The translations under genes were made by a program, and so were the position numbers. Of a stretch of DNA of 64,000 bases, positions 2,993-53,172 are shown piece by piece. The notes beneath the pieces were generated by a model. It had not been told where the DNA came from. It searched no databases and was given only the letters and a program-made list of their open reading frames with translations. The stretch lies in the NCBI GenBank assembly GCA_964252035.1, contig OZ176200.1; one strand, written 5' to 3'. Origin of the DNA: Podarcis erhardii (taxonomy: Eukaryota). Position 1 is the first letter of the stretch. Each line of letters opens with the position of its first letter.

Positions 2993-3283
2993 CAGACCCT
3001 CCAAGTGTCCCTATTTTCCAGGGACGTCCCTGATTTAGAGAAGCCGTCCTGGTTTCTGATTTGATCCCAAAATGTCCCATTTTTCCTTAAGATGTCTCTA
3101 TTTTCATTGGATAAATATTAGAGGGTATAGAGTTATCCAACCCCTGAGCCATCTGAAGGCAATCCTATATAGGGAAGTGGGGTTTTTTAAAATGTTTAAT
3201 GTTTTATTATGTTTTTATATATGTTGGAAGCTGCCCAGAGTGGCTGGGGCAGCCCAGTAAGATGTGTAGAGTATAAATAGTAA
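2993..3283 (+). mobile_element. Composite repeat: hAT-like head plus L2-type tail
   Basis: CAGACCCTCCAA...TTAGAGGGTAT inverted ends (2993-3129); 3232-3283 matches the reverse complement of the L2 tail at 41825-41890. Confidence 0.6.
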
Positions 3284-5545
3284 AGGGGTTAGCAGCAGGA
3301 AGAGGGTGAGTGAGGGAGATGTGGGGTGGCAGGGTGCCCAAATAGTGGGGGTGGGGGTTGATCACCAGAATATGGCAACACTAATCCGGTAATCTATATC
3401 AGACTTCCCCAACCTGCCCTCTTCTCCACCCCCCCCCAAAAAGATACTAAACAATTGTGCACAGTCTGTTACAAAGATTAGAACAGACCATGCTTAGTTG
3501 AGCAGAAGTAAAACAAAAATCCCCATCTGCCTCAGAAGTCAGGGCCAACAGATCTTTGCATTCCTTTATCACATGCTGGTGGAACTGGTCAGCTGTGCCA
3601 GAATATACTGCACAAAATGGCAGTAGATAAATAGCCACCAGCTAGGAACCTGCTCCTAGGTGTTAATGCCCAGGTCCAAGCCTCAAAATGCTAACACACT
3701 GGTATATTTATAATGCATCTCAAAAGCCTGGCTCATAGTGCAATTGGCCCAATGATTACTTGGTATGGATTTAAAGCCATTTGGTACTGAGGAAACATTG
3801 CCCAAAGGATCCATCTGTGCTATAAGAAGCAGGGAAGGCCCCGTCATTCATCTGCCTGATGGGAGGGAAGGAGTCCAGCTGCAGGGCCTCAGCCTGAATG
3901 AAGGTTGGGGAAACCTGGAGGATATAAAAAGCCTCAGAGATGAGGGGGAGGGAGGCCATGGAACTCCAGAGAACATCCTGGGATAACTAGGCCTTTAAGT
4001 GAGGGCCTGCCACACAAAGAAGGCCTTAGCTCTTACTCTTATGTCATCTTCAGGCTCTTCCTCTGAGCACCATTGAGTAGACTCATAAGAGGGCAGCATA
4101 GAGGCATTCTAGGTATACTGTGCCCTGTTTCTCCACAGGAAGGCCCCAGGAGTCTGGGACTTAAGTTTGCCAAAACTAACAGCACAGAAGCCAGGCACCC
4201 CAAGGAAGAAGGTCAACAGGAGGGCTGTACTTATTGTTGATAGTAACCTGGGACATGGTGGAAGATGGCCTGTGAAACAGAAAGCCATCCTTTTGCGCTT
4301 CCACCACCACCTGAGACGCTTCACCCTGCCTCATTGCTGGGCCGGCTCTGCTCTCTTGGATAACCTTCCAGGGAGAAGGCCACACTCCAGCCACACAAAT
4401 GTTAAGGGGTTTCTGTACATACAACTCCTCCCTCCAGGTAAGCAAGAAGCCTTGTTACAGCTGAAGGTATGCCAGCCAAGCAGAAGAACTGGAGATGGTG
4501 CAGAATAGGTCCAGTGAGGGGTGTAGCCCCAAGTGCTGGATACCAAATGGGAGACTGGGAACGATAAGCAGAAATGCATTCATACATTTCCGATCTTGCA
4601 TCTTGTTTGTCCTGATTTACCATTACTAATGTCAGGTATGGTGCCTGTGTATTGAGTCAGCAATATACCTGAAGGATTTCAGAGTCTTTGAAACAATCAA
4701 AACATCATTTCATCCTGCAAGTAATGGATCAGGCACAAAAATGGCTTAAGGCAGCCGGTATGTAAACATGTTACATTTTGCAAGCAGCAATGCTAAAAGT
4801 TGTGGTAGTGCAGTATGTTTTCATCTCAGGATGTCCTTTGCACATGAATAGCACCCTGAAAGATGCATCAATGTTCACATATTGATTGCTCGCTACTCTA
4901 CAGTGAGCTTGCACATATATATAACCCCCTCAAATGCCATGGATAGAATTTTTAAATAATTGTAAATCTAGCACCTTCTTGCAGCCAGCCCCCTTCCCAC
5001 CATGTTTTTACCCGTTCTTGTTTTGACTGCTTCAGAATTCAGCCCAGCATTAAGAAATTCATTACTGCATCCAGTGATTGCCTCTTCACCAACAAACTTG
5101 AGAATGGTGAGCAATAAATATGTGAGCACACATTTTCAACAAGAGGAAGGTAAGGTTTAAGGAAAGATAGATAGTCAGATGAAGCATATTCAAGCATGTA
5201 CTTAGCGGCAACATGAAGGTCTCTTCAGGAAAAAGCGTAGAATTAACATTGCAAAGCAAAGTGCTTTGAGAATTGCAATAGTTATTTTACACAAAAGGCA
5301 CCAATCCAGTGGCTGTTCTAACTGGAGGACTTAACATTCCTTTCGACAATTGCTTGGTGGGTGATCAAATTTGCATCATAAGCCGAATCCAGCATGCTGG
5401 ATCCAGTGAGTGTGCTTTTCCCCACACCAAGCCCTTTCTCTACACATTTTGGCCCTGCAACATGCCATTGGTTTGGTGCCAGTGCCATCTCACAGAAAGA
5501 GTTGTATAAGCAGGTTAGTATGATTCTCCTACCTTAGTCTGAGAA

Positions 5546-5626
5546 TTACTGATCAGGGATGGGAAATGATGGGATTAAGGTACAATGTCCATAATTCATT
5601 ATCGGACAGTTACTGCCCTGGAGTCT
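5546..5626 (-). CDS. FLVCR2: Candidate FLVCR2 terminal coding exon 10 (RLQGSNCPIMNYGHCTLIPSFPIPDQ*)
   Basis: Phase-0 acceptor tacAG after a long AG-free pyrimidine-rich stretch; starts RLQ (human KLQ); length similar to the human last exon; weak sequence support. Confidence 0.55.
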   Translation of the reverse strand, partial: RLQGSNCPIMNYGHCTLIPSFPIPDQ

Positions 5627-6504
5627 CTGTAACAACAGCCATATGTCACAATCCCAAAGAGGGGCAGAATTAAAACAAAAACAGGAGGCACAGACAGATA
5701 GACAGACAGACAGGGAATCATGATGGAATAAGCTGGTGAAACTCTGCAGAACTGAAAGCGAGTGAGACTTTTGATCACTAAAAATTCCACAGAATGTTCA
5801 GCTTTATAAGCCCTGGACTCATTCCAAGGCACAGAAGATCTGATTAACCTAATCCCTGAAGAATTATGTAGTCTCAATGTTAAATAAATTCATTTATTTT
5901 AGCTTACTTCTCTTCTGCCAATTTGTTTCACTTTAAGTAAGGAGGCTCCAAATGTTCAGATTAGCATTTTGGGGTCTGAAAGTTATATATTAATGTGGAG
6001 CAATGTGTCCCCCCTTAAAATAAAATGAAACCAATTGTGCATTTCTCACTTATGCTTGTGATTCTTCTCAAGACCACTGTGCTCCACCTCTCTGTCGTTC
6101 CTTCAGCACCATGTTTTTCCTCCTCTTTTACAACATTATCCCTAGCAATCAGGGATCATGCAGCAAACATGATGGTGCTACAATGCGGTGTCATTAATCA
6201 AATTTGGTACTATCAGAACATCACTGGAAAGTAAACAAAGCCAATTCTGAAATAGGTGCTTTACATTGTTTGTAGGTCATTTTATTATTGCGAGCCACCC
6301 TGGGCTCCCTTTGGAGAGGGAGGGTGGGTTTTAAATTTGAAAGAATAAATGAATTCAAAGTGAAAACAATGCTTTCCACATGACATTACCTTTCCACATT
6401 ACCCTGGGCAAAGGAACACATCAATAGGCTGAACGGGTGCCACAGAGAGAGAAGCACTGATACCATTGTTGCCTGGGCTGCTGCCAAGCAAACATGCTAT
6501 AGCA

Positions 6505-6641
6505 CAGGGGTGGGGAACCTTTGGCCCTCCAGATGTCGCTGAACTATCATTCCCATCATCACTGGTCATTGGACATGTTTGCTGGGGCTGATGGGAGCTG
6601 TATTCAGCAATATTTGGAAAGTAAATTTCCCCCCACTACTG
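6505..6641. mobile_element. Palindromic hAT MITE (degenerate)
   Basis: CAGGGGTGGGGAA left end and internal palindrome as in the 62719 copy. Confidence 0.6.
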
Positions 6642-8413
6642 TTGCAGTCACTTCTTCTCCTGGTAAGACAGCGATGACACATTTTGAGATACCCTCCCCA
6701 CCCCCAAAGAAAAACAAAAATCAGGATAACAATGTGAATTAAAGGAAACTCCTCTCTTTTGGCTTAGTCCTATTTGTAACTCCACAATTCAGAATCCAAG
6801 ACCAGAATCTTCATTATATATTGCAGAAGAGAATCCTTCATTTACCCAATTCAGCATGACCTGATTCAGAGTTAGAATTGCCTCCCCCCCCCCCCCCGTA
6901 GAGATTCTGTCCCTTTTAATAACTGCGTAACAGGCAAGTCGTTCCCATCCTGTATCCCAGGAAAAGGTTCAGTTGCTGAATTCTTGCCTGCCACGCAGCT
7001 GTCTAGAGCACAGGTACCCTGTCAGAAAAACAGTTCACTGCATAAACTAAATATTTCAATATTTGGCTTTACACAGAAGAATCACATAACTGTCACTGTA
7101 TCGAGTGCGGGGAGCTTAAACATTAGGAAGTTATTTGAAATTTGTTAGTTTTGTTTGCCTTTTCAAGAACTGTCTTCTGATGAAGATTTAAAACATAATG
7201 ATGACCCAGGTTGTACTCAATATGTCTGTTTTGAAGTATTGAGTACAGGTAACTTGCAACTCCCGTGCATTTAACTTGTGTTTTACACACCTGGCAAAAA
7301 AATAAATAAAAAGAATGCAGAAAGGAGGGAAAAAACTTTGGCAATCCCACCCGCCTTTGAACCCAACGTATTTTGACCATGTGTGTTCTTGGCTTTACTC
7401 ACTATGCCCAGAATGTAACCCCAGGGTAAGTTGAGAGTCACCTGTACTACTGTGCGTCTGCTACAAAACTTTGCCAAAGATATATGCCAGATACAAAAAT
7501 CAAATAGTCAGAATATAGACAACAAAAGTAGCAAGGAGAACTTTGGAGGAAAAGCTTATGGAAAGCAGAAATGCCCATCTGGTTCCTGTGCCCAAGGGTC
7601 AACTTACAGGCACAGTATCTTAGAGATGGAAGGGATCAGTAGCCCATTCCTCAGCTGAAAGGCAGGATCACCCACCCATCAGACAGTGTGCCCAGTGACA
7701 CCTTTACACTGTGAGCACCATCACATCCACCCTCTATCTTGTTGCACTGTCCCATGGATTGCATAAGCCCATCTAGTCCCTGCAGGGCTCTTATTATGTT
7801 CTCAGAAACAATTACCAGGGATGCTGGGAGTTGCAGTCCAGCAACATCTGGTTCCCTAGTCCTAAATGAATTTAAGATAAGCCAGAACAGCTCCCTGCTG
7901 GAGCCTCCATCATCCCTCCCAATCTGCTCTGGAGGGTCCGCCAACACTCATTGGATTTGGGGAACTCTCCATGGCACATTTTGAGGCACATAGTGGGCAG
8001 GTAGGAGAGTAGTTTCAGTGTGCACAAGTGAAGTCCATTGTGCGAGTAGGACACCACCCCTGGATATTACCCATGATCTTTCACCTTTCTTTAAGCAGCT
8101 GTATTTGCATTTACTTAAGGTTACAAACAGCCTAACACTGGTCTGGCTAGTGCACCAGATGTATGCCCTCAAACAGAGAGATTGCCAGCCTGTCTCTCTC
8201 AGTACTCGCAGCTGGTCCCAGGCACATGCCACACTTTCTCCTGGAGGAGAATCCAACAGCATTCAACCGTTAACAACCCAAACCTGGCACAGCTGAGGCA
8301 GCAACAATACTCCCTCAAGCTGGCACAGTTATTCATCACAATAAAAGCAAAGGAGACTCACAGGTGCAGACGGTTGGCCATAAGCTACCAGCATAAATAT
8401 ATGATTTACTCAC

Positions 8414-8469
8414 AGTCTGTTCATCGCGCAGGTTGGCCTGCTGTCTCCGGAGATCTGCTTTGATGAAAG
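8414..8469 (-). CDS. FLVCR2: FLVCR2 exon 9 (56 nt)
   Basis: ccAG|(A)FIKADLRRQQANLRDEQT|GTGAGT; 56-nt size as recalled for FLVCR2 rather than FLVCR1. Confidence 0.93.
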
Positions 8470-9077
8470 CTGGGGCATTGGAGGAAGAGAAAACAGAGCC
8501 AGGAAGTCACTGTGTGTTGACCATAAGCAGCTCTTCACAGAGCAATGGAGTTCAAGGCAGGGCAACATGAAGAACATGGCTTACGACTCAGAAAGCACAA
8601 CGGAAGTAGGGAACAGGGTCTGCCCTCTCCATGGTGGAAAATAAATTATTTTTAAATCTTAGAACATCTATTCCACTTCTTAAATCTACTCCACTTCTTA
8701 GCCACCCAAACAGGTCCCCAAGGCAGCTTCCAGATTAAAAGCACAATAACACAATAAAAATACAACAGGATATTAATTCAATTATTAAAACAGCAGCATG
8801 GAAGGACACAAAACAACTGGGTTGGCATAAATAGAGCTATTGGAGAAAGAGGATTTTCTTTGCATTTTAATGAGAAAGGTACCTAATGCTCACTTCCTGA
8901 ACGTACATGCAAACTGAAACACAGCAATTTTACTTGCAAAATTGTGTGAGTCAAAACTGCATACAAAAAAAAAAAATGTGTTTGTTAGGAGAAATTTTCA
9001 CTCAAAGGCATCTCAGCCTTTTGGCTAAGAAACCATCCTCTATTTTTTAAGACGCTTATGAATTATCATGAGAATTA

Positions 9078-9110
9078 AAATAATAATAATGATGATGATG
9101 ATGATGATGA
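9078..9110. repeat. (AAT)n(GAT)n microsatellite
   Basis: Direct reading. Confidence 0.9.
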
Positions 9111-9335
9111 AATGCTACAGAAATGTGGAGTACTGAGTTTAAGACTGAAAGAGAAAATAACTGGAAGAACCAAATTTGACCGATTTGCCATCCCTAGGTT
9201 AAAAATAACCATTCAAAGTGATTCAACGTTGCAGCCCTACCCTAAACGTCAGTACTTTAAGCTGGGGTAGCAATACAAGAGTTGTAGGAAGCAGGAGCTG
9301 AAAAGGGTTTGACAATGATTGGATAGTGTAGTTAC

Positions 9336-9447
9336 CAGTTATAACAGTGCCGACAAACAGGAAGCTGCAGAGGAAGAGGTTTCCTGCTTGAGTTCCAAAA
9401 TGTTCAAAGATCTGTGCTTGGCTAATGGTGAAAATTATTCCAAATAT
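9336..9447 (-). CDS. FLVCR2: FLVCR2 exon 8 (112 nt)
   Basis: tcAG|IFGIIFTISQAQIFEHFGTQAGNLFLCSFLFVGTVIT-G|GTAACT. Confidence 0.94.
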
Positions 9448-9499
9448 CTGAAACAAATTCAAACAAGAGTTACAAAGAAGAAACTGAAGAAAGCTACTG

Positions 9500-9647
9500 C
9501 AGCATAGTCCGGTCACACCGCTCCACCTAGCACACTGGCAAAGCTAAGCAGGGTCCAGTATGGTTTCAAACTGAATGGGAGACCATGTGTTGAGATTCCT
9601 GCATTGGTAAGTGTTCAGGGTCCCTTCCAACTCTACAATTCTATGAT
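9500..9647 (+). mobile_element. 5S rRNA-derived SINE with CR1-type tail
   Basis: AAGCTAAGCAGGGTC and TGAATGGGAGACC match 5S internal promoter segments; CR1-like tail follows. Confidence 0.65.
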
Positions 9648-9752
9648 ACCACCTTGAAGAGCTGGATTCATCAACAGAATTCCTGAGCAACAGCAAAGCC
9701 AAGCTAAGAAGTGAGTCTGTTTACCTGCTATATTTTCTGAGCACTCACTCAC

Positions 9753-9858
9753 CTGTGCAGCTACATTAAGAAGGCCCGATGACGTCCCTTCCGATTCTGG
9801 GTATGTCAGTTCTGCCGCAAATTCAAAGCCCAGTGGTAGGTACCCAGTCATGAAGAAA
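9753..9858 (-). CDS. FLVCR2: FLVCR2 exon 7 (106 nt)
   Basis: gcAG|(G)[35 protein letters not shown]|GTGAGT; FLVCR signature motif. Confidence 0.96.
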
Positions 9859-10535
9859 CTGCCAGGAAAGATTGGCGGGGAGGAAAGCATCAGCAGCTGC
9901 AACATTTGGGCCATGCAGTTTCAAAGTGAGGGTGCTTCTCCAAGCTCCACTTCAGTCTCAAAGGCATAACCCTATTTGCTTCCCCCTGGCCAGGAACAGT
10001 TGGTGGCACAGAGCAGGATGGCATAGCTTACCTTGCTTCCTGTTAGTTACTGCTGGTAACCAAGAGGGGAGGGAGTGAGGCTGCAGGGAAGTCAGTGCAG
10101 TGCAGACACAGCAGCAGAAGTGTCTGACTGGCCGTGCGGCAGCACCTGCACTGCACCAACCTCCGAGACGCCTTGCCACTCCCCCTCTTGGTTTACTGTC
10201 AGCAACCTCCACATTGGGAAGCCAGGTCAACAACAGCACCCCACCTCACCAGCAGCTGTTGCCCATAGCATTTCATTCAACCACACTCTGCAATGCAAGA
10301 TGTTCATGGTCAGCAGAGATATGAAAGGATATGATGGCTGCTATGCATATCCCATAGCTCTCACTTTGCCTGGGTATCCATTGTTTGTGGTACTTTCTTA
10401 CTCTTCACTCCACTGGAGAGGGAAAGAAGAGGCATCTTCATCTCCATGTCAAGGCAGCCGCCATATGCCTTCAGAGTGAAACTCCTTCAAAGAAGAGAAA
10501 ATTCACCCTGGGTGTGAGAGGAGAAGCAAACTTAC

Positions 10536-10646
10536 CCCAGCACACCTGCTGTCACAAAGACCACCCAGATATGGCCTAGGTCCAGAGTAAACGTGAAAAC
10601 CACCATGCCCACAAATGACATGATGTAAACCAACAGAGTTGTCTGC
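10536..10646 (-). CDS. FLVCR2: FLVCR2 exon 6 (111 nt)
   Basis: acAG|(K)[38 protein letters not shown]|GTAAGT. Confidence 0.95.
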
Positions 10647-10964
10647 CTGTAACAAACAAAACACAATCAGAATGAAGCTACTGTTCTTACACTGTATTCA
10701 ATGTTTTTAAATTCGGATTTCATTACATTTTAACTAAAATTAAGTTCTATTGTGGGGGGGAACCCCAATAAAAAATCAAATTACCGGGTAATCCGACAGC
10801 CTGACAATATTCATCTTTGCATGCAAGAAAGTTGCAGGGGTTCCTCAAACTACAGCCAGGCCAGCAAATGTCTCCTGACAGCAATAGGCCAAAGGAGGTC
10901 ATGCAATCAGACCTAGAACTCGTGGACATCCAAGGAAGCTTAGGGTTGAAAGATTCAGGATGGT

Positions 10965-11188
10965 TGTTGAACACCCTGGAACTTCGACATTTTGGCTCCC
11001 GAATGATCAAAATCCAGAAGTGACTGTTCCAGTTTTTGAACATTCTTTTAGAAGCTGAACGTCCAATGGGGCTTCTGCAGCTTCCGATTGGATGCAGGAG
11101 CTTCCTGCAGCCAATCAAAAGCCATGATTTGGAAGTCAAACGCTTTGGAAGTTGAACTGATTCCCTTCAACAACCAAGGTACGACTGT
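10965..11188. mobile_element. Degenerate Tigger-like MITE
   Basis: Ends CCAAGGTACGACTGTA; internal GATTGG...CCAATC palindrome; left TIR not found. Confidence 0.5.
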
Positions 11189-11284
11189 ACTTAATTCAAA
11201 CAATGTGTAGTTAAACTATGGGACTCGATGGGCAAATAGCCTGATCCAGCAGGCTATTCTTAAGTTCTTAGCTATAGAAAGTGG

Positions 11285-11560
11285 CAGGCCAGTCCCACCT
11301 AATTTGGCAGAGTGAAGTGGCCACCTCAGGTGTCAGGTAATAGCATCAAGTTGTTGGAACACAGATCTATGTGGTGTGCACAACCTGCCTCACACCTCCT
11401 AGGCTACCTTGCTGCCCTCAGTTTCAGTGGAGGAGGTGTCTCCTCACCAGGGCTGAAGTAAAATTCAAGCACCGGAACATTTTGTGTCTGTACATGGAAT
11501 GGAGGAGATACGCCATCCTCTCCTTCACCTCAGGCAGCAAAATGTATTGACCTGGCCCTA
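11285..11560. mobile_element. Old hAT-like element (related copy reversed at 51425-51668)
   Basis: CAGGCCAG / CTGGCCCTA ends; shares TCCTTCACCTCAGGCAGCAAAA with the reverse complement at 51.44 kb. Confidence 0.55.
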
Positions 11561-12486
11561 GAAAGAGACTGTGGGCCTCATAGTGGTATATCTAGAATGT
11601 CACTTTTTAATTTCTGTAATTAAATTAAACACAGGGTATCCTACACAGATGCTGGTAAGAACCAATAGGTATAGGAAACTGGAGAAATTAACAAGGCCAG
11701 TTAGTGAAGCTGACACGGCTTATTTCTTGAGAAGCTTTCACTAGTATGCAGGGATTAAAGTAGCGAGCACAGTCAGGAAAGCAGGGAAATCAAAGGACAA
11801 CTCGAGGATATAAAAAGCACATGGAAATCACTCCCTGCTGCATTTGCCTAGGAAATTAATCTACAGCCGCTCTGAAGGAGATGGCAGCTATTTTTATGCA
11901 AGAGCAGAGGTAGAATGTGGGTCCTGCAACAGTCCCCTGAACTTTGCACTGCATCTTACTGCATTGTTAAGCTATCTACCTCAGTCAGAGAGACAGGGAA
12001 AAGAGCCTCATGCATGAGCCTACACCAGCTTCCCTGAATTCCCTGAAAACCCCCCACTGCAGTGTTATGTCACTGTAGGGACAACAAAATGGTGGCTGCT
12101 AGTTCTCATAGGAGGAGCACTGCTGCCGCCACCATCACTCCTCTTGCCCTCCTTGTCCTCCTCCTCTGCCAGAAGTAGGGCCCTGCCAATATGTCCTACT
12201 CCCCATTTCTTACATCTGTAATTCAAAAGTTGTCAAGTCCTGCTCTACCTCTTGTGTAAAAGAGTAAGACTTCCCATTGCTCAGGGACCAGTGAGAAAGC
12301 CTGACCTGGAAGATTTTCTAAAGGTCAAGGAGCATCTGCTACTGCTTGGAAGAGGCTTCTGTAGCTGCTCTCAACATGAACTGGCTGAGGTCCCTAAGGT
12401 CACCAGCTTCTGACTTATAGCTTGGCAGAGTCCAGACAAACGCTCACATGTGGTATTGTGAGATAATGCGGTTGAATAAAAAGGAT

Positions 12487-12735
12487 GGGAGTGGCGCTGT
12501 CGGTTAAACCACTGAGCCTAGGACTTGCCGATCGGAAGGTTGCGGTTTGCATCCCCGCGACGGGATGAGCTCCCGTGGTTCCTGCTCCTGCCAACCTAGC
12601 AGTTCAAAAGCACGTCAAAGTGCAAGTAGATAAATAGGTATCGCTCCGGTGGGAAGGTAAACGGCGAGATGAGTGCCGCAACCCCAGAGTCGGTCACGAC
12701 TGGACCTAATGGTCAGGGCTCCCTTTACCTTTACC
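12487..12735 (+). mobile_element. Sauria SINE, internally deleted
   Basis: tRNA-like head with B-box-like motif, AGCAGTTC-AAGCACGTCAAAGTGCAAGTAGATAAATAGG core, (ACCTTT)n tail. Confidence 0.88.
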
Positions 12736-14984
12736 TTAAAAAGGTAACAAGCTTTCCCAGCAGCGAACAGCATGGCGGTGCTGTACTCCTCCCCTGACCT
12801 CTGGCTGGTGTGTTGCTGCATTATCCTGAGATGGGGAGGAGTACAGTGGCAGCAAGGTTGGCATGGTGCAAGTGCACTGGCGGAGCCAATCTAGTATTCC
12901 TGGTGGTGCATTTGGAAAGTCTGATTCACGCTCCTCACCCTCTCCCTCATTGTATGTGACAACGTCTCAGTTGGACAGAGTTGGGCAGCACAGCCCCGGG
13001 CTGCTGGCTATACGTTTGCCAGAGAGAAGGGGGGTTAGTAATGGCCTCTTGCTTTGGGACACTCGCCCACGTAACCTGTCAGGATTGAAGCCTTTAATCA
13101 ACCAAGAAAGGTCTCCCTGCTTCTCCCAACTACTGGCCCTTTAATTGGTCATTTTTTGAACTAGCAAGACCTGGGGGACCTTTACTAACTGAAAGCTCTA
13201 ATCCTAAATAAACTTCCTTAGAAGTAAGTCCACTTAACTGAATGGGACTTCCTTCTGGGTAAATATCTTGTTCATGATGATGGACACCGTGCAATTGTAC
13301 AGCCATCTTATTGTCTGTACCATGGCCTTTTGTACATGCTACTAGACAGGAAACAACATGCAATCACTTCCTGCATCACTTTTGAAGCATATTTATCGGG
13401 AATGGCAGAGCTTTGAAGCTGATCCAAGCTACTTTACAGTATTAAAGTAAGAACAGGAGTGAGAGCAGGGCTTCAGTACGCTTGCTAGGTATTCCTCGGG
13501 TGGAGCAGGGATGGTGAGAGACATTTTACACACAGATTTTTAGGATCTCCCTGGATTTCTTTAAAAAAATCTGCTAGGGAACAGGGAGGGATGTACTTTA
13601 ATATGGGAAGAGGACAAGAGAGGCTGAGACTGAGTCATCCAAACCTAGTTAGCACTCTGAGTTTGCTATTAAAGGGAGTGAGATTAAGGGCAGTCACGAT
13701 TTGCATTCTACTTCTAGTCAACTGTGGAAGAGCAATAACTCAGCAGGGCTGCTAAAGTACAGTTACTGTTTACAGTGGTAGGAGGTATATATAAGTTCAG
13801 TGATTACAGTTCTGCGTTGGGTCAGAGATCTATCCTTAAGGCTTAATGGGAGGGCAGCCTGCTATTTTCAGAGCAAACATGCACAGAACGACAAGAAGCT
13901 GCCAAGTTGTTATATCAGGGATAACCAGGATACAGTAAAATTGTATCCATCTTGCTCCACTCTGAAAAAGCACTCTCTGTAAGTACCCTGCATTCCAGAG
14001 AATGGCTTGGCAGGAGGGATGGGTACCTTTCCCAGTTATATATATCAGCAACAGTTTCCTTACATCGCCCCTGTCAAGCTAAGAGAAAAGGAAAAAATAA
14101 CGCCCCACTAGAGAGTGTCACAGAAGCCCTTACCAGCATGATCTAATTGGTCATGCAACTTCTCAAAAGCTTCCTTCTCAAATGATAATAATAATTTTTA
14201 AAACCTCTTCCTGTACTTTAGGGGATTTATAGCATTTATGTTTGTGTGTGCATGGATTAATTCTTATCCATAAGTGGTAAAAACGGCAAGAGGCTTTGCA
14301 GGATCCTTGTTAAATCAGATGAGCAGAAACACATCACTCCCTAGCAGCAAATTCACCCAAAAGAATTCATTTTACTCACCTCTGTTTCAGGGTAGTCCTA
14401 CATGTTACTGCGGGAAGCAGGCTGGACCCCCCCCCCCGGAAGTGATAGTTGAACCCTTAGCCGATAAATATTTACAAATTACACATCTGGGAGCCATATT
14501 TGCTTTGGCAGCTAAGAAGCTCCAGTCCAGTTATGTTAATGCATCATACTTTATGCTGTTGATTTTCATGCTGCAGACTTCTATGCTGTAGATGTTACTG
14601 GTAATGTTGTGCGATTTTAGAGGAATCCCTTTGTTGTTCATTGTGAAGGCCTTTGGCTACATACAATAAATTGATTGATTGATACTGAGAGAAGCATAAA
14701 CCAAGTGTTCACCTCACTGCGCTAAAGTGAGGGAGAGGGAGGTATCTGCAGGGGAGAAGGGTTTATCCTTCCCCTGAAAGTCTATTATTTGCCAAAATAA
14801 TAATGCTTCCTTCCTCCTCCACACACTTATCTTCTTCACTTGTTCTTTCTGTCATCCCAGCTTAACTACGTATAGAGCCTCTATAGAGAAAGCATGATGT
14901 TAAGCAGTGCTAAAAACTAGCCGTTAGGGGCTGCTGTTTAAGACAGAAAGCCCTTTGATGGAGATTTCCATGCAGTGGCACAGC

Positions 14985-15592
14985 CAGTGGCGTAGCGTGG
15001 GGGGTGCAGGGGGGGCCGGCCGCACCGGGCGCAACATCTTGGGGGGGCGCACTCACCGCCTCCGGAGTCGTCGAAGAGCCTCGGGCGCAGGCTGTAGCAG
15101 AGCCCCATGTCTCACAGAACCAACGAGCTGTGCGCACGTCTGGCCTGAAGGTGTCCGGCAGGCAGCGGCTCTCAGCGCTCGCCGCGGTCCCCGCGCTTCA
15201 GGGCCGCGGAGGGCGCGCCAGGCAGCCCCTCCTCACAGCCCCCCCCCGCCCCCGCCGCCGCCGCCGCTGCAGCTGCTGGGCCATGTTGCATTTTCCTCGC
15301 CTCTCTGCCCTCCTCCTCCTCCAGGCAAGCGGTGTCGTTTGGGCGGCAGTGCCAGCAGCAACTCGCCTCAGATCACCTGACACGGACCCGCTGCCGTGGC
15401 TACCTTACCGTAAACACCCCAGCCCAGGCAGCGGCAAGAAGAAGCTGGCAGCGGCGGCAGGTTAGGGGTTAGGGGCGCAAATTACTTGCCTTGCCCCAGG
15501 TTAGGGGGCGCAAATTACTTGCCTTGCCCCGGGTTAGGAGGTGCAAATTACTTGCCTTGCCCCGGGTGCTGACAACCCACACTACGCCGCTG
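14985..15592. mobile_element. Non-autonomous hAT-type element, long 'loaded' copy
   Basis: TIRs CAGTGGCGTAGCGTGGG / CCCACACTACGCCGCTG; perfect 8-bp TSD GGCACAGC; three subterminal ~34-bp repeats; GC-rich passenger about 15041-15459. Confidence 0.9.
15046..15108 (-). pseudogene. GNAL: Captured fragment of GNAL XL-isoform exon 1 (start codon region)
   Basis: Translates MGLCYSLRPRLFDDSGGGECA, 14/21 identical to recalled human XL-Golf MGLCYSLRPLLFGGPGDDPCA; then runs into TE terminus; no further GNAL sequence. Confidence 0.8.
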
Positions 15593-16009
15593 GGCACAGC
15601 TGCCTTCTGGGAAGTATAAATCAGCAAGGCCACACGCCTGGAGCAGGCCTGGATTGAGTCACACCACCAGGGTCACAACACTTGTGAGGATAGAGGAATT
15701 ATCCTTATACAGGGTCACTGAATTATAGTATGTGCAGCTAGATGGACAGTGACAACTCTGTGCCGCACATTGGGCAATTTTTTAAAAAATTACCTTTAGA
15801 AATACTTAAAGCAATTTATGAAACCCAGATATTTAAGGACTGTTTGAACACACCACAGTGGCAGAAAATTAAAAGTTTTTGTCCCTAGGTACCAAACTTT
15901 CAATAGCTCTAGCTTTGCACAACAGAAAACACCCTGACAACCCGCAGCCTTCTGCAAAATTCCTACTTCCTAGCTCTTCACCACTCAACTTTTCAATTCC
16001 AGTCCATTA

Positions 16010-16250
16010 CAGTGGTACCTCGGGTTACATACGCTTCACGTTACAGATGCTTCATGTTACAGACTCAGCTAACCCAGAAATAGTACCTCGGGTTAAGAAC
16101 TTTGCTTCAGGATGAGAACAGAAATCATGCTCCGGCGGCACGGCAGCAGCAGGAGGCCCCATTAGCTAAAGTGGTCTTCAGGTTAAGAACAGTTTCAGGT
16201 TAAGAACGGACCTCCGGAATGAATTAAGTACTTAACCCGAGGTACCACTG
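16010..16250 (+). mobile_element. Tc1/mariner MITE family A
   Basis: CAGTGGTACCTCGGGTTA...TAACCCGAGGTACCACTG, TA TSD; five copies in window. Confidence 0.9.
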
Positions 16251-16799
16251 TATTAACCTCTCCTGCATCCTGAAGAGTGCTTTGAGATCGGTCTTTGCTC
16301 TTAGTTTTCCTCACAATACTTTGTTTGTGGGCGCACTCACTCACTTTCATTGCCTTATCACAGAAAATCTTCCTGCTGAGGTAAGGCATTTGTCTTATCA
16401 GATAAAAACTTGTATCGCTTCAGTTTTTATTATATTAGTGGTTGGCTTTAATTGCTGTGAGCTGCCTTGAGTGGTGTGAAGGCACCAGAAAAGCAGGAAA
16501 CACATTTTTATATAACTAAATACATTTGCAGGGGAGAATCAGTGGCGGGGGGGGGGGGAGTTAAGCATCCCTACCTCCTGCCCAGCAATTTTTCCTTGTG
16601 TCAGCGCACATCTGCCAAGAGAGCATCTAATCTGGACCTAAGAGGAGTATTGTGGTGCATCTCAATTCCCCTTTCCTCTAGTTACCCACCTCTCTTTCCC
16701 TAGAAACACATTCAAAAAGTTACAGGCATATCTTAGGAAGTAAATCAATGCAATATCTTAGGGATGCTACACATTTAAACCAGCCTTTCTACAATATGA

Positions 16800-17128
16800 G
16801 GGACGTGGGTGGTGCTGTGGGTTAAACCACAGAGCCTAGGACTTGCCGCTGAGAAGGTTGGTGGTTCGAATCCCCACGACAGGGTGAGCTCCCATTGCTC
16901 AGTCCCAGCTCCTGCCAACCTAGCAGTTCGAAAGCACATCAAAGTGCAAGTAGATAAATAGGTACCACTCCAGAGGGAAGGTAAACGGCGTTTCTGTGTG
17001 CTGCTCTGGTTTGCCACATGACCTGGAAGCTGTACATCGGCTACCTTGGCCAGTAAAGCGAGATGAGCGCCACAACCCCAGAGTTGTTCACGAATGGACC
17101 TAATGGTCAGGGGTCACTTTACCTTTAC
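16800..17128 (+). mobile_element. Sauria SINE
   Basis: Near full length; TSD TTCTACAATAT (16787-16797 / 17129-17139). Confidence 0.92.
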
Positions 17129-17436
17129 TTCTACAATATATAAAAATGCTCTTGGACCTCTTGGCAAGCCTTTACTCCAAACTGTGGTCCCCGCATCTTC
17201 CTCCTACCAACCTTTTAAAAAATAAACAAAATGCTATACTTTCTGTTAGTCCCTCCAATGCACAGTTCATTTAGCTAGGACAAGCACAGCCTCACACTGC
17301 AAATAGTAGAAGTCACAGGCACATGTGCCAAGGATTTCAGCCAAATAGCTCCAAAGCTCTTCCAAAGCAGGAAGCAGCTCCTGCAGAGTTTCCCCCTATA
17401 CTTACCTGCTGAATAGCGGTGGTATAAAGGACTTAC

Positions 17437-17540
17437 TTGTATGTTTTGGTTCTGTCCAACCAGAGGCCAGTGATCAAAGCTCCAACCATGCCAGCCACGA
17501 CAATGGTGAGGCCAATGCGACCAGCGTTCAGCTGCTCATC
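17437..17540 (-). CDS. FLVCR2: FLVCR2 exon 5 (104 nt)
   Basis: gcAG|[36 protein letters not shown]|GTAAGT. Confidence 0.95.
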
Positions 17541-18258
17541 CTGCATCAGCAACACACAAATGCACAGAGCAGTTTGCTTTCAAGCACACAAACAGCTGGA
17601 GGGACAACAGGAGACCTCAGGGTGGAACCAAGAGCACTGAAAACCGATGTGGTACACAGGACCCAGGGGGTAGGCTGGGACCAGAGAGACCCTGCTCAAG
17701 GCTCCACTCCAGCAGTGAGGCTCACTAGGTGAGAATCAACCTTCGGGCAATGGAATGAGAACCTGCTCCAGCCTGAGGACCACATACTCACATGCACAAT
17801 TTCCCAAGGGCAGCATGCCAGTGATTAAAGAGGCCGGCAGCAAAAGTGGGCATGGACTAGGGAGAATCTGGAGGCATTATCAGCACTACTAGGCTTTGAA
17901 GACACTGTTGGGAGGTGGTATTATATTCCTGATCCACACACGTACACAAAATCAGGAGTGTTTCTCCCATGCACAAGGCTTAAAATGACATTCTGCTTGG
18001 AATACGCATGCATGAAATCTGCCTTGATTTTTCGAATGCCTCTCTTCCTTTTCCCCTTGAGCATCAGAAAATGACTGAGTGCTCACATACATGGAATTAA
18101 GAGGCTCAGAAATTATTTTCAGCCTCGTGTTCTCAGGCTCTCGCCTTCGTTCTTCATTCTAAGGTTCCCCTAGAACAGAGGATCACAGGCATCTATTATG
18201 CAGCAAGGGCCAGTGTCCTGAAGGGGAAGCTATGACACCTGAACAGAATGTCACTTAC

Positions 18259-18326
18259 CTTATAGTGGCTGATCACCATGCGGGTGAGTAGGGTCGAGAG
18301 AGCATAGAAGCAGCCTGTGTTTAAAC
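18259..18326 (-). CDS. FLVCR2: FLVCR2 exon 4 (68 nt)
   Basis: ccAG|(G)LNTGCFYALSTLLTRMVISHYK|GTAAGT. Confidence 0.94.
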
Positions 18327-20611
18327 CTGGAAGGTAGATAACAAGACAGCAAATTCATAGCGTGCCCTGGATTATGAGACACACAGCAGCACTGCCAGGT
18401 CTCAACCACAAAATCCAGTGAGGTCAAAGCTAAATCGGGGTTTGAACCCTTGTTAAAGTCTGGACAAACACACATAGACCAGCTTTGTTGTCTTCGCAAT
18501 CTTGATACTAATCTTCAGGTATTTCCTGAACACACACAACACCCTTTCCTCTTCCTGCAATTGTACACTTGAGTTTATTTATTGGGACAGGGGGGAAATT
18601 AAGAAATACAGTACTGAAATGCAGGCACACAGACAGGACAATGACTAGAAGAGGGCATTACTTTGGAACAAGCATCATTCATTCACATCAAAGCTGTTGT
18701 CTCATTAGCCAGGTAGGAGCCGGAGGGAGGGTAGAGATAATGAAAAACCCAGAGCACAGGTGAGAGGGATGCAGTACACAGGGATGCAGTCTGCAATTCC
18801 TCTTTCACAATTTTCTAGAGGAGACCATCTGAATAACTGGGCACAGCCTTTGATGTACACTTTTATTGCAGCCCAGCTCTCCCCACAAGGCCAGCCGCTG
18901 CCGCTGTCACCATTCCTACTTCTAAAATAGTGTGGTGTTTCTTCACAGCTCCATCAATGTCTCTAGCGGAGCCTTTCTCTGCGTTTCAGTTTCCGTGTTT
19001 AACGGGAAGGAGACAAATGAGCTGTTTCAACATCCCCAAAGCACAATGCAGCAGTTTGGATTCCTAAAGGGGACTTGTCAGAACAATAACGAAATGCACA
19101 AACTGCACAGATTCATCACTGGCCTCTGCCCACAGTAGAATTAATTGCCGCAGACACAGCAGTGATTTCTAAACCTTTCATCGCTATCGATCCTTTTCTT
19201 TAAAGTTAGGACCTGATTTGTATGATCAGGTCCAAGAGATCAGTGACAGTTCACTGCCCTTCTGCTCAGTGTGGACGGTAATATCAATCATCATCATCAC
19301 CATCACCACCATCATCTCAGTAGGATGGACTGCTAGTTTGACCACACTTACAATGAATCCAAATTCTGCCAGCAGTGCTGTGGCAAAAAAAACAACACTG
19401 CAGAATATTTAACATGGCCATACAGAACGCAGAATGGAAAGCCTGTTATTTACAAAAGGGAGATAAACCACACAGAAGGAAGTCAAGAACTCCCAGTCGA
19501 GAGACATGACAGTGAACTTTGAATACTCCTGTCTTCTTCAGGAGGAAGGTCGATTGCAATCACTCTGGCACACTCTTCAAACAATCAGCAAGCCAACCAC
19601 CGAGGAAGTGATAAGGCAGGCAAGATGCTGACAGCACACATTCCAGGGGACCATCTGACCCTGAACATAGGCAGCAGCACACCTTGCCCTTTGTGCTACA
19701 CTGTTTTGACAGAGAAATGGGATGCATTGAAGGATATGCTTAAGGCCAATAACACAGTCTTGGCGGGGTGGAGGGTGGGGGAACTGGTAGAAGTCAGGAA
19801 CTTGCAAGGACTCTGGAATTCATTTCATGCCATTTGTACAAATAAAACCACATCCTTTCTCTTGTCACAAGACCACAGCATCACAAGATTTTAGTGTGAC
19901 CTTATAGAGAAGCATGCAGAGCCCTACTTGTTACAGCTGTCATTGCTGTAAAAGAAACAACCACATACACACACACACCCAAACCAATGCGTGACTTCAC
20001 TGAAAAGCTTCATGATAAATTTGGAAGCCAAAAGGAATGTCCTATTAATTTGTATGAGAAAATGAATGCCTGGCTAACTGCTCATTAGAGAAAGTTTTGT
20101 CATCTCCCTTTCTCCCCTAGTGCTTTTTGTTTGTTTGTTTGAACCTTATTAGAGTTTGAACCATTGGCAGAGTCTTGGGAAAGGGTGGAAAAAATTGCTT
20201 GTGGAGGCCAGATGAAGCCCCCGAACTGAGAGTTGGCTATCCCTGTTCCAGCCATGCTACTGCTATACCTACCTGCTCCCTGTCACAGTTTAATCCAAAG
20301 CAAGATTCACCCCCCACAATTCCCCCCACACACACCTAGCAATATTTAAGTCCAATGTAGCCACAGCAGTGCAGCTGTGGAATGATTATCTGGAGGGAGG
20401 GAAATAAGTGACACCCTGCCTCTATATAGTCCAAGATATACGAAATATTTGGTTGTTTTGGATGTTTTCAACCTGCTTATCTGTGAAAGGAGGCTGGGAA
20501 AGAGGTTAAAAGGAATAGTTTTCAAAACTATAGACTGGAAAAACCCTGGGATACTCTGGGAGGAAGGGCAGGATATAAATTGAATACATAAATCATAACA
20601 CATAATAACTG

Positions 20612-20853
20612 AAACAAAATAAAAAAATTAAAAAATCTTTCCAGTAGCACCTTAGAGACCAATTTAGTTATTGGTATGAGCTTTCGTGTGCATGGACACT
20701 TCTTCAGAAACCATGCACACGAAAGCTCATACCAATAACTAACTTAAAGTTGGTCTCTAAGGTGCTACTGGAAGGGATTTTTATATTTTTTTATATTTAT
20801 TTTATTTTGTTTTGACTACGGCAGACCAACACGGCTAGCTACCTGTAACTAGT
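20612..20853. mobile_element. Penelope-like fragment with inverted terminal duplication
   Basis: Arms about 20639-20695 and 20711-20773 are reverse complements; 12-bp flanking duplication ACATAATAACTG. Confidence 0.75.
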
Positions 20854-22023
20854 ACATAATAACTGGCTACACATTGCTTTGGACTGCCCTGGGCAAGATA
20901 AAGCAACCAACAAATTTAATACTAATAATAACTAAATGGCCTAAATGTGAGAAATGCTCTCAGGAAGATCCATTTCCATCCTTTTTTTTTTTAATTACTT
21001 TAATCCGTAACTGATCCCTGCCTCTTTCTTCTGAATTCCGTTCCACTGAATGACAGGGACAAAAGAGAGAGAGAAGACTTTCTGTCTGAAAGTCGTGCGT
21101 CTCTATTTCCTCAAAAGAATTCAAATGCAGAACAATAGTAGGACTGTCTCTAGCAACTAATTGTGATGCTCAGAGCAGCAGAGATGCCTGAATGCAAAAA
21201 GACTGCAGTACAGTACTGGTTCTGGAGGGATTAAGGAGAAGCAGGAACACTCTGCAAACTGTATTCCCACTCAAGACATCTTCTGCACTGTGCACAGGAG
21301 GAAGGAAAAAAAGACACCCCAAAATTGCTCCATCTCTTTCAGCCAGGAAGCCAAACCACCCAATCACTCCTTTGGCTACATAGCAGAACTGGAGCCAGAG
21401 CTCTCACAGCAATGAGAGGTCTGTCTTTACAACACTGCATACCCTGATCTCTCAAATAAACAAATAAGGTGGTTGTTGTCTAGAGCTAGAGAGAACCCAT
21501 AGAAAACAGGAGACATATCAATCTTTTCTGTTACTGTGGAGAGAGAACTGAACACAACCATCAAATCACTCTCGCTGTGCTAGGGCCCATAACTGAGACT
21601 TCTGTTGAGCAGAAGACATTGGGAGGAATTATGAGGCTTTGATTCTGTCTGGGCAAGCATTTCAGTTTGTCGGACAGAATAATTCCCCCTCTTCTCCTGC
21701 CACATGCTGTCCCCGGGGGTACTCCCATCCAACTCCTGAGTCAATTTTGGGGCAGGGTGTGTGTGTGCAGGAGGAGGGCGGGACAGGCCTACTGTGCAAG
21801 TGGAAGTCTTTGCTTAGGGCTTCTGCTGACAGGACTCCTCAGCTGAACCCTCCCCACACATTTCCACAGAACTTTACAACTCCTCCCTGTTTATAGATGC
21901 TTCCTCAAAGGAGGTTTCTTCATATTCTATTCAAAAACTTTCCCTTCCTTTTTATTTTCTCTGAGTTGCTGGTTTGTTAAAGGTTTTTTGGTGTGTGTGT
22001 TTGCAAAATTAGGAAGAAAAATA

Positions 22024-26776: not shown

Positions 26777-27094
26777 CTATAATGTAATGCACAACATATC
26801 CCACTTCAGTGCATGGGACAATTAAGAAGAGATTTCCAAGAATTTTGCCACTAGCACTTTCAGTGTGAGAAGCACTTCAAACTGCTTATCACGTTCATCC
26901 TGGAAAAGGGCCCTATAAATATGTAAGTGCATCCACTTTGTGGACTGGAAACAAACAAACTCAAAGGTAAGTGCCCTGCCCAAGGATAGAGTAGACTTTT
27001 TGATGGCTCAGTGGCATCATAAACTATTGTGCCATGTTTTAGACCACAACTAAAAGTTGCGCTTCTATTCAGGTCACTCTGTTCAACTCCTCTC

Positions 27095-27615
27095 AAAAGC
27101 AATGACAAACCTAGACAGCATCTTAAAAAGTAGAGATATCACCTTGCCCACAAAGGTCCGTATAGTAAAAGCTATGGTTTTCCCAGTAGTGATGTATGGA
27201 AGTGAGAGCTGGACCACAAAGAAGGCTGATCGCCAAAGAATTGATGCTTTTGAATTATGGTGCTGGAGGAGACTCTTGAGAGTCCCATGGACTGCAAGAA
27301 GATGAAACCTATCCATTCTGAAGGAAATCAGCCCTGAGTGCTCACTGGAAGGACAGATCGTGAAGCTGAGGCTCCAATACTTTGGCCACCTCATGAGAAG
27401 AGAAGACTCCCTGAAAAAGACCCTGATGCTGGGAAAGACTGAGGGCACAAGGAGAAGGGGACAACAGAGGATGAGATGGTTGGACAGTGTTCTCGAAGCT
27501 ACCAGCATGAGTTTGACCAAACTGCGGGAGGCAGTGGAAGACAGAAGTGCCTGGCGTGCTCTGGTCCATGGGGTCACGAAGAGTCGGACACGACTAAACG
27601 ACTAAACAACAACAA
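27095..27615 (+). mobile_element. Bov-B (RTE) LINE 3' fragment
   Basis: MTNLDSILKSRDITLPTKVRIVKAMVFPVVMYGSESWT...RLND with a premature TGA at 27303-27305; (CAA)n tail. Confidence 0.95.
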
Positions 27616-29099: not shown

Positions 29100-29257
29100 C
29101 AGTGGCGTAGCGTGGGGGGTGCAGGGGGGGCCGGCCGCACCGGGCGCAACATCTGGGGTTAGGGCAAATCCACAGGTTAGGGGGCGCAAATCCACGGGTT
29201 AGGGGGCGCAAATTACTTGCCTTGCCCCGGGTGCTGACAACCCACGCTACGCCACTG
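29100..29257. mobile_element. Same hAT family as 14985, short 'empty' copy
   Basis: Same termini CAGTGGCGTAGCGTGGG / CCCACGCTACGCCACTG; perfect TSD GCTCTGCC; no passenger. Confidence 0.9.
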
Positions 29258-53092: not shown

Positions 53093-53172
53093 TAATTCTG
53101 ATCTCTGGATTCTAATCCCACAATGAATACTTACCTCAGAATAGGGGGGAGGGCCATCACAAATAGTGGTGT

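What the first reader, a model, noticed from the sequence alone, without database searches (positions are those of the whole stretch)
14985..15592. hAT element carrying the start of GNAL XL exon 1 inside FLVCR2 intron 5
Seen: TIRs, a perfect 8-bp TSD (GGCACAGC) and a ~420-bp CpG-rich passenger that is absent from the 158-bp sibling at 29100. On the minus strand the passenger has gacATGG (good Kozak) at 15108 encoding MGLCYSLRPRLFDDSGGGECA. From recall this is 14/21 identical to the N-terminus of human XL-Golf (GNAL long isoform). The frame then runs into the TE end and stops at 14938 (56 aa, below the ORF-track cutoff). CpGs are largely intact, suggesting a recent or unmethylated insertion. 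Inference: DNA-level capture of the GNAL CpG-island 5' end, now sense to FLVCR2.
Basis: partly seen in the sequence, partly recalled or inferred. Interest (0 to 1): 0.85.

Follow-up and report, generated by a model that had tools for sequence, protein, structure and literature searches.

The report
Cargo-carrying hAT transposon, high-copy family
A 608-base hAT-type "cut-and-paste" transposon that carries a 414-base CpG-island-like cargo with a start codon sits in an FLVCR2 intron; it is a young insertion, missing from a related species, and is one of thousands of copies, while its proposed origin from the GNAL gene could not be tested here.

Summary
Window 14985-15592 is a non-autonomous hAT-type element. 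It has 17-bp TIRs (15/17 matching) starting CAGTG and a perfect 8-bp TSD, GGCACAGC. Its 414-bp cargo (15044-15457; GC 70%, CpG o/e 0.79) is absent from the 158-bp sibling at 29100. On the minus strand, sense to FLVCR2 (intron 5), the cargo reads ATG-MGLCYSLRPRLFDDSGGGECA.

New here:
- A DNA contig from a relative about 3-4% diverged runs from 14979 straight to 15596. It skips exactly 616 bp (element plus one TSD), so this is an empty site and the insertion is young.
- The cargo is not a one-off. Summed contig depth suggests about 2,000-7,000 copy-equivalents in the window's species and about 100-400 in the relative.
- This copy differs from the family majority mainly by CpG transitions. These created the GTGAGT "donor" and changed two codons, which argues for germline methylation.
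- No reads or joints show transcription from this locus.

The GNAL-XL origin still rests on recall alone, because no tool reached a GNAL locus or protein.

Best reading: one member of an amplified Pack-TIR-like hAT subfamily, probably non-functional at this site. First readers of this scan noted at least six similar elements elsewhere in this genome.

The parts
14977..14984 (.). left copy of the 8-bp target-site duplication, GGCACAGC
   Evidence: family D8, spacing 616; the relative's contig keeps only one copy
14985..15592 (.). whole non-autonomous hAT-type element, 608 bp
   Evidence: exactly this stretch plus one TSD copy is missing from the organism G contig (record 11)
14985..15043 (+). 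left arm, with the 17-bp TIR CAGTGGCGTAGCGTGGG at 14985-15001; 98% identical to sibling positions 1-59
15044..15457 (-). cargo: 414 bp, CpG-island-like (GC 70%, CpG o/e 0.79), absent from the sibling. Read on the minus strand it is about 350 bp of GC-rich non-coding DNA followed by the ATG and about 19-21 codons. The boundaries are uncertain by about 9 bp, because GGGGGCGCA at 15043-15051 also occurs in the 33-bp arm repeat.
   Evidence: high summed depth and many contig variants in two species
15046..15108 (-). ATG (15108-15106, context gacATGG) plus 20 further codons, MGLCYSLRPRLFDDSGGGECA. The family majority gives G at residue 13 and R at residue 20. This is the stretch said from recall to match the GNAL XL N-terminus.
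15051..15056 (-). GTGAGT donor-like hexamer just after codon 17. It is specific to this copy, created by two CpG-to-TpG changes; the family majority reads GCGAGC.
   Evidence: (15051 A>G, 15055 A>G in the majority of contigs)
14938..15108 (-). 56-codon ORF plus its stop codon (14938-14940). It runs from the cargo through the left arm into the intron. No domain and no homologue were found.
15466..15567 (+). 3.1 tandem copies of a 33-bp subterminal repeat in the right arm, consensus GGGTTAGGGGGCGCAAATTACTTGCCTTGCCCC
15576..15592 (-). right TIR, matching the left TIR at 15/17
15593..15600 (.). right copy of the TSD, GGCACAGC
29100..29257 (+). 158-bp cargo-less sibling of the same family, with 17/17 TIRs and its own TSD GCTCTGCC at 29092-29099 and 29258-29265
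17436..17540 (-). FLVCR2 coding exon 5, upstream of the element. It aligns to human FLVCR2 residues 340-375. The exon's upstream boundary is approximate.
10536..10651 (-). FLVCR2 coding exon 6, downstream of the element. It aligns to human FLVCR2 residues about 373-412. Its limits come from a 3064-nt RNA contig.
   Evidence: (record 15)

Best explanation
This is one young copy of an abundant non-autonomous hAT (MITE-like) family. The copy belongs to a 'long' subfamily that carries a 414-bp CpG-island-like cargo between the left arm and the 33-bp subterminal repeats.

The cargo was acquired once, before the window's species split from a relative about 3-4% diverged. It was probably copied from the 5' end of a host gene by template switching or gap repair at short G-rich homologies. 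By recall that source is the promoter/5'UTR and first ~20 codons of the GNAL XL first exon. A hAT transposase supplied in trans then spread it to roughly thousands of sites. That makes it a multicopy Pack-TIR-type transduplicate.

This copy landed in FLVCR2 intron 5, in the sense orientation, after the split.

At this site it most likely does nothing:
- The 56-codon ORF is a truncated gene start that runs out into the TIR and the intron.
- The copy is losing CpGs in the way methylated DNA does.
- The splice-donor-like GTGAGT is an accident of that decay.
- No transcript from this locus was seen.

Shown: the element anatomy, the empty site, the high copy number, the CpG-decay pattern and the host gene with its orientation. 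Inferred: a single capture followed by amplification, the capture mechanism, and methylation. From recall only: GNAL XL as the donor.
For: Anatomy:
- 8-bp TSD, TIRs starting CAGTG, and a cargo-less sibling with its own TSD.

Mobility and age:
- The organism G contig (2386 bp, depth 49.6) aligns 13038-14979 and then directly 15596-16027, with record positions 1948 and 1949 adjacent. It skips 616 bp, which is 608 plus 8.
- Organism A contigs bridge both junctions with 0-1 differences.

Copy number:
- Unique flanks have depth about 85 in X1 and about 50 in X14.
- Positions deep inside the cargo (15197, 15323, 15350, 15357) have 158,000-407,000 in X1 from 48-99 distinct contigs, and 4,700-13,200 in X14 from 8-24 contigs.
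- The two end bins (14836-15033, 15430-15627) reach 1.4-1.9 million in X1 and 0.26-0.33 million in X14.

Decay:
- At 15051, 15055, 15323, 15350 and 15357 this copy has TpG/CpA where the majority has CpG.
- The cargo holds 40 CpG now and 46 with the majority letters.

No coding role:
- No Pfam domain.
- No homologues.

No local transcription in the runs laid:
- Flank depth is 0.
- No joint from the element to exon 10536-10651 is listed.
- The RNA contig over the cargo carries the majority letters, so it comes from other copies.

Context:
- Unchecked first-reader notes list at least six more GNAL-XL-like hAT elements, and other hAT elements with promoter/first-exon cargo, in this genome.
- Pack-TIRs formed by hAT elements are documented in animals (PMC8277862).
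Against: - The donor gene was never seen.
- The tool warns that summed contig depth is not a copy number. My estimate assumes that depth at interior cargo positions comes from cargo copies only.
- The direction of change is not proven. The 608-bp form could be ancestral and the 158-bp form a deletion derivative, with the GC-rich interior being old transposon sequence.
- Only the seven best-supported cargo differences were listed (391 rows hidden), so the CpG-decay share may be biased.
- RNA reads over the family show a 5-7:1 strand bias in the sense of the ORF. A purely passive element does not explain that.
- The two TSDs do not fit the usual hAT target preference, nTnnnnAn.
Confidence: 0.6

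Rival explanations
1. The interior is native transposon sequence, not a host-gene capture. The 608-bp form would be an older internal-deletion derivative of an autonomous hAT, for example its GC-rich 5' UTR/promoter and the start of an ORF. The 158-bp MITE would be a further deletion. The MGLCYSLRP resemblance to GNAL XL would be a coincidence or a faulty recollection.
For: - The cargo is high-copy in two species and makes up a sizeable share (very roughly 10-40%) of family members, as expected for a normal subfamily.
- MITEs usually arise by internal deletion.
- No database hit ties the cargo to any host gene.
Against: - If the recalled human sequence is right, a 9/9 identical N-terminus starting exactly at a Kozak ATG, plus LF and then G in the family majority, is very unlikely by chance.
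- The cargo has no transposase-like ORF.
- Other hAT families in this genome are noted with different gene-start cargos, including one at 37545-38338 in this window.
Confidence: 0.2
2. The cargo was captured from a host gene other than GNAL XL whose product also begins MGLCYS..., or from a lineage-specific paralogue.
For: - The cargo has the look of a gene 5' end: a CpG island and an ATG in good context.
- The identity of the donor rests on recall only.
Against: - I know of no other vertebrate protein with this N-terminus. That is recall, not a test.
- Searches found none, but they were blind to proteins longer than 98 aa or too insensitive for 20 residues.
Confidence: 0.1
3. The cargo works here as a mobile promoter and alternative first exon. 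Transcription would start in the CpG island on the minus strand. The ATG plus 17 codons would splice from the new GTGAGT to FLVCR2 exon 6, giving a chimeric or truncated FLVCR2 transcript.
For: - The element is in the sense orientation, with a Kozak ATG and a consensus donor 52 nt downstream.
- Family RNA reads are biased 5-7:1 to the ORF's sense strand.
- An RNA contig over the cargo has depth 40.9, against 18.5 for the FLVCR2 mRNA contig.
Against: - No joint from about 15057 to 10651 is listed, and read depth is zero in the flanks.
- The RNA runs are from organism H, about 2.5-3% diverged, which may lack this insertion. The test was therefore weak.
- The donor would leave the exon in phase 1, and no check was made that this fits exon 6.
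- The CpG-decay pattern suggests the copy is methylated.
- RNA depth along the element roughly tracks DNA copy number.
Confidence: 0.07
4. A unique, single-copy capture event seen at this locus.
For: Only one loaded copy occurs in the 64-kb window.
Against: - Interior cargo positions carry roughly 2,000-5,000 times the unique depth, from dozens of distinct contig variants.
- The cargo is also present in the relative whose orthologous site is empty.
- First-reader notes list more copies elsewhere in this genome.
Confidence: 0.03

Closest known systems
Pack-TIRs of animals (hAT and Tc/mariner elements carrying duplicated host sequence; Tan et al. 2021, PMC8277862)
   Same: A non-autonomous TIR element with a TSD whose interior is a non-transposase, gene-like fragment absent from the plain family member. 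hAT is the commonest carrier superfamily in that survey (208 of 370). Their multicopy frog example also carries a 5' UTR fragment.
   Different: That survey found only 4 multicopy cases, and the frog example had three copies. For the lizard genome it used, it lists 0 Pack-TIRs and only 77 TIR elements. The cargo-bearing form here appears to number in the thousands. The parental locus, a defining item, was not seen here.
Pack-MULEs of rice and other plants (established knowledge: they preferentially pick up GC-rich 5' gene fragments and can be multicopy)
   Same: Capture of a GC-rich gene 5' end including the start codon, amplification after capture, and non-coding chimeric ORFs.
   Different: A different superfamily (Mutator, 9-bp TSD, long TIRs) in plants. 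Here the element is hAT-type with an 8-bp TSD and 17-bp TIRs, in a vertebrate.
Non-autonomous hAT families of lizards (hAT-N families of Anolis carolinensis; Novick et al. 2010, PMC3014272)
   Same: Short elements of 135-800 bp, 8-bp TSDs, TIRs of 12-57 bp mostly starting CAG, and copy numbers from hundreds to over 1,000, with recent activity.
   Different: None of the TIRs tabulated there is CAGTGGCGTAGC. That paper's text has no mention of captured host sequence.
GNAL long (XL) first exon
   Same: By recall, the human long isoform begins MGLCYSLRPLLFGG. This copy begins MGLCYSLRPRLFDD and the family majority begins MGLCYSLRPRLFGD. The fragment is a CpG island, as the long-isoform promoter is reported to be (recall).
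   Different: Only about 19-21 codons are present. The rest of the exon, the intron and all G-alpha domains are absent, and the frame runs into the transposon arm. No sequence of any GNAL gene was available to compare.

Membership tests
hAT superfamily, non-autonomous element | 8-bp target-site duplication | tested here: met
   GGCACAGC occurs twice at 616-bp spacing. The sibling has GCTCTGCC twice. The relative's empty site keeps one copy.
hAT superfamily, non-autonomous element | short TIRs whose ends fit 5'-YARNG | tested here: met
   The TIR is CAGTG..., 17 bp, matching 15/17 here and 17/17 in the sibling.
hAT superfamily, non-autonomous element | target preference nTnnnnAn (a tendency, not strictly defining) | tested here: not met
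   Neither GGCACAGC nor GCTCTGCC has T at position 2 or A at position 7. Two sites are too few to judge.
hAT superfamily, non-autonomous element | an autonomous partner with the same TIRs that encodes a hAT transposase | not testable with these tools
hAT superfamily, non-autonomous element | evidence of transposition (presence/absence at an orthologous site) | tested here: met
   The organism G contig joins 14979 to 15596. Organism A contigs bridge both junctions.
Pack-TIR (transduplicating TIR element) | TIRs and a TSD enclosing sequence that is absent from the plain family member and encodes no transposase | tested here: met
   A 414-bp interior is absent from the 158-bp sibling. The ORFs have no Pfam domain.
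Pack-TIR (transduplicating TIR element) | a parental, TIR-less copy of the interior at a host locus | not testable with these tools
   There is no access to the rest of the genome. Protein and paper searches were blank.
GNAL XL first-exon fragment | peptide identity to an actual GNAL XL N-terminus, and DNA identity to the species' own GNAL locus | not testable with these tools
   The length filter hides proteins of about 450 aa from a 56-aa query. A 20-residue match cannot reach significance against 1.84 billion proteins. The match is recall only.
CpG island / promoter | over 200 bp, GC over 50%, CpG o/e over 0.6 | tested here: met
   414 bp, GC 70%, o/e 0.79.
CpG island / promoter | unmethylated state and transcription start sites | tested here: inconclusive
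   Five of the seven listed differences are CpG transitions, which suggests methylation. RNA reads over the cargo come from other copies and another species. Their strand bias is unexplained.

The most novel reading that the evidence does not exclude
A host CpG-island promoter with its start codon (GNAL XL) was captured once by a hAT MITE and then copied to thousands of sites in one lizard lineage, ten-fold or more above the number in a close relative. This would create a population of mobile CpG islands. Through CpG decay these can gain splice donors, as in this copy, and so supply alternative promoters and first exons to host genes such as FLVCR2.
Probability: 0.15. Interest if true: 0.85.

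Novelty: new member of a known kind. Interest (0 to 1): 0.55.

Why it matters
Gene-fragment capture by cut-and-paste transposons is well known in plants. In animals it was catalogued only recently, and almost all cases are single-copy. The one lizard genome in that survey scored zero (PMC8277862).

If the cargo really comes from a host gene, this family would be by far the most amplified animal Pack-TIR. It would also be a natural experiment on what happens to thousands of dispersed copies of one CpG-island promoter: methylation, decay and occasional exonisation. The large copy-number difference between two species only 3-4% apart points to very recent, perhaps ongoing, hAT activity.

The single copy in FLVCR2 is probably of no consequence by itself.

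Tried and rejected
- Global MAFFT alignment of the element and its sibling mis-placed the left arm. BLASTN replaced it.
- I searched the 153-aa plus-strand ORF over the cargo against 5.8 billion proteins, hoping to catch ORFs called on other copies or on the parent locus. Nothing scored.
- The same search with the 56-aa ORF found one candidate and no hit. The length filter excludes full-length G-alpha proteins.
- phmmer of the 56-aa ORF against 1.84 billion representatives gave two hits. Both are unrelated internally repetitive proteins.
- PDB sequence searches with the ORF, and with the PGAM5-like ORF of the second element, gave nothing relevant.
- Paper searches for the peptide, for XL-Golf names and for the TIR string gave nothing relevant.
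- Findings look-ups by sequence and for CHMP1B, a gene I recalled as lying inside GNAL, were blank.
- The prokaryote-type promoter/terminator scan is irrelevant here and was blank.
- I considered reading the GTGAGT as the captured gene's own exon-intron border. I rejected this because the family majority has GCGAGC there.
- I considered the RNA contig over the cargo as the parent gene's mRNA. I rejected this because it appears to begin about 27 bp inside the transposon's left arm (inferred from the distances to its end listed).

Full report
**What is in the sequence**

Window 14985-15592 is a 608-bp element.
- It starts with CAGTGGCGTAGCGTGGG and ends with that sequence's near-complement, matching 15/17.
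- It is flanked by a perfect direct repeat, GGCACAGC, at 14977-14984 and 15593-15600 (family D8, spacing 616).
- A 158-bp relative at 29100-29257 has 17/17 TIRs and a different 8-bp duplication, GCTCTGCC.
- A 23-nt end pattern occurs exactly twice in the window, against 0.00 expected by chance.
- BLASTN between the two copies shows they share element positions 1-59 (98%) and the right arm from about position 474-482. That leaves a 414-bp interior, 15044-15457, found only in the long copy.
- The right arm holds 3.1 tandem 33-bp units.
- The interior has 70% GC and CpG o/e 0.79. The intron flanks have o/e 0.23-0.35.
- On the minus strand, gacATGG at 15108 opens MGLCYSLRPRLFDDSGGGECA. The frame then continues through the left arm, with its stop codon at 14938-14940, giving 56 codons.

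**Host gene**

Minus-strand exons in the window match human FLVCR2 slightly better than FLVCR1 in each of four tests, for example 55.4 against 49.2 bits.

Coding exons lie at about 43.1-43.7 kb, 24.1 kb, 23.4 kb, 18.3 kb and 17.44-17.54 kb. The element comes next. It is followed by 10536-10651 (limits from an RNA contig) and exons near 9.8, 9.4 and 8.44 kb. The element is thus in intron 5, counting coding exons, and its ORF is sense to the gene.

**It is a real and recent transposition**

I laid contigs and reads of four public runs on 10480-16400.
- In organism A, the best DNA holder and probably the window's own species, contigs bridge both junctions: 13921-15007 with no differences and 15582-16030 with one.
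- In organism G, whose flanks differ by about 3-4%, one 2386-bp contig of normal depth (49.6) aligns to 13038-14979 and continues without a break at 15596-16027.
- That contig skips 616 bp, exactly the element plus one TSD copy. This is the clean empty site expected if the element never inserted there.

**It is not a one-off**

Depth from the same call (28):

| Place | Organism A (X1) | Organism G (X14) |
|---|---|---|
| Single-copy flanks | about 85 | about 50 |
| Cargo interior (15197, 15323, 15350, 15357) | 158,000-407,000, from 48-99 distinct contigs | 4,700-13,200, from 8-24 contigs |
| The two end bins (14836-15033, 15430-15627) | 1.4-1.9 million | 0.26-0.33 million |

The tool warns that summed depth is not a copy number. 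These cargo positions are more than 100 bp from either arm, and the variants sit about 30 letters from contig ends. I therefore read the figures as order-of-magnitude estimates:
- about 2,000-7,000 cargo copies in A, against about 100-400 in G;
- about 17,000-22,000 family ends in A, against about 5,000-6,500 in G.

The cargo therefore predates the A/G split and was amplified much more in A. This copy is one of the post-split insertions. First-reader notes of this scan, which are unchecked, list at least six other GNAL-XL-like hAT elements of 438-587 bp in other genes of this genome. They also list hAT elements with other promoter/first-exon cargos.

**This copy against the family**

The best-supported differences inside the element are at seven positions where most contigs carry another letter: 15051, 15055, 15071, 15197, 15323, 15350 and 15357.
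- Placed in context, five are CpG in the majority and TpG/CpA here.
- One is a transversion at a CpG, and one is a non-CpG transition.
- The cargo has 40 CpG now and 46 with the majority letters.

This is the signature of germline methylation acting on a young copy. It does not fit a protected, unmethylated island. One caveat applies: 391 further rows were not shown.

Two of these changes turn the majority's GCGAGC into GTGAGT at 15056-15051 on the minus strand. The splice-donor look-alike after codon 17 is therefore specific to this copy and not a captured exon border. The majority peptide is MGLCYSLRPRLFGDSGGGER.

**Expression**

RNA runs that held cargo words all come from organism H, which differs from the window by about 2.5-3%.
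- A 376-nt RNA-library contig (depth 40.9) covers most of the cargo. It carries the majority letters and seems to begin inside the left arm, so it comes from other copies.
- Raw stranded reads (X40) give zero depth in the flanks.
- No joint from the element to exon 10536-10651 is listed.
- Along the element, RNA depth roughly follows DNA copy number.
- Reads over the family are 5-7:1 on the strand that corresponds to the sense of the ORF. The two reads on the FLVCR2 exon suggest a library in which the first mate is antisense to the RNA. I cannot explain this bias. It is the only hint of promoter activity.

**The GNAL claim**

I could not test it.
- The word-indexed protein search only sees proteins of 31-98 aa for a 56-aa query, and it found nothing.
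- The 153-aa ORF over the cargo found nothing.
- An exhaustive phmmer run returned only two unrelated repeat proteins.
- The PDB and paper searches were blank.

If the recollection is right, nine identical residues from a Kozak ATG, then LF, then G in the family majority, are far beyond chance. I put the GNAL origin at about 0.6.

**Mechanism**

I infer the following.
- A single capture into the family backbone, between the left arm and the first subterminal repeat.
- The capture may have used G-rich microhomology. GGGGGCGCA at the left junction, 15043-15051, recurs in the 33-bp unit at 15504-15512.
- Trans-mobilisation by a hAT transposase then followed.

This is the Pack-TIR model (PMC8277862). 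That survey found 370 cases in 100 animal genomes, 208 of them on hAT elements. Only four were multicopy, and its lizard genome row shows none. The TIR is not among the Anolis hAT families tabulated by Novick et al..

**Verdict**

- The element, cargo, orientation, intron and recency are right.
- The donor gene is untested.
- The event belongs to a family, not to this locus.

The locus itself is probably inert. The family-level picture, a cargo-bearing hAT subfamily in the thousands that differs more than ten-fold between close relatives, is the interesting part and is cheap to verify with the assembly in hand.

Noticed in passing
window 37545-38338: A second element of a different hAT-like family, with ends CAGGGGTTAGCAAAC... 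/ ...GTTTGCTGACCCATGG. Its GC-rich cargo reads, on the minus strand, MAFRQAVAVATAAACGLAGGS... and later ...WDSNWDR followed by gtaaag. By recall this resembles PGAM5 exon 1 with its splice donor, as another first-reader note says. A PDB sequence search with the second piece gave nothing relevant.
   Followed up: partly
window 14836-15627 (RNA run X40): Stranded RNA reads over this MITE family are strongly one-sided: first mate on + versus - is 81 vs 12, 21 vs 3.9, 5.6 vs 1.6 and 95 vs 38. That is the sense of the cargo ORF. Neighbouring SINE-like repeats are near balance or biased the other way. This is unexplained.
   Followed up: no
window 12460-12855 and 16008-16400: Very high-copy repeats. 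Summed contig depth is 5-27 million in both DNA runs, which is 10^4-10^5 times the unique depth. They are abundant in RNA and have sharp ends at 12737, 16008 and 16252. They are probably SINE-like elements. Lesser repeats lie at 10876-11271 and 11470-11667.
   Followed up: no
window 15460-15475: The junction between the cargo and the right arm reads GGTTAGGGGTTAGGGG, a telomere-repeat-like motif that also begins each 33-bp subterminal unit.
   Followed up: no
window 27057-27605 (+) and 53087-53671: ORF fragments that look like the C-terminal part of a BovB/RTE-type LINE reverse transcriptase (…ITLPTKVRIVKAMVFPVVMYGSESWT…). By recall this would fit a squamate genome.
   Followed up: no
window 43071-44400 (-): FLVCR2 exon 1 ([11 protein letters not shown]...AVFGNQ) lies with GC-rich upstream sequence, presumably the gene's own CpG-island promoter. 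The whole 5' half of the gene, with a first intron of about 19 kb, is inside the window.
   Followed up: no
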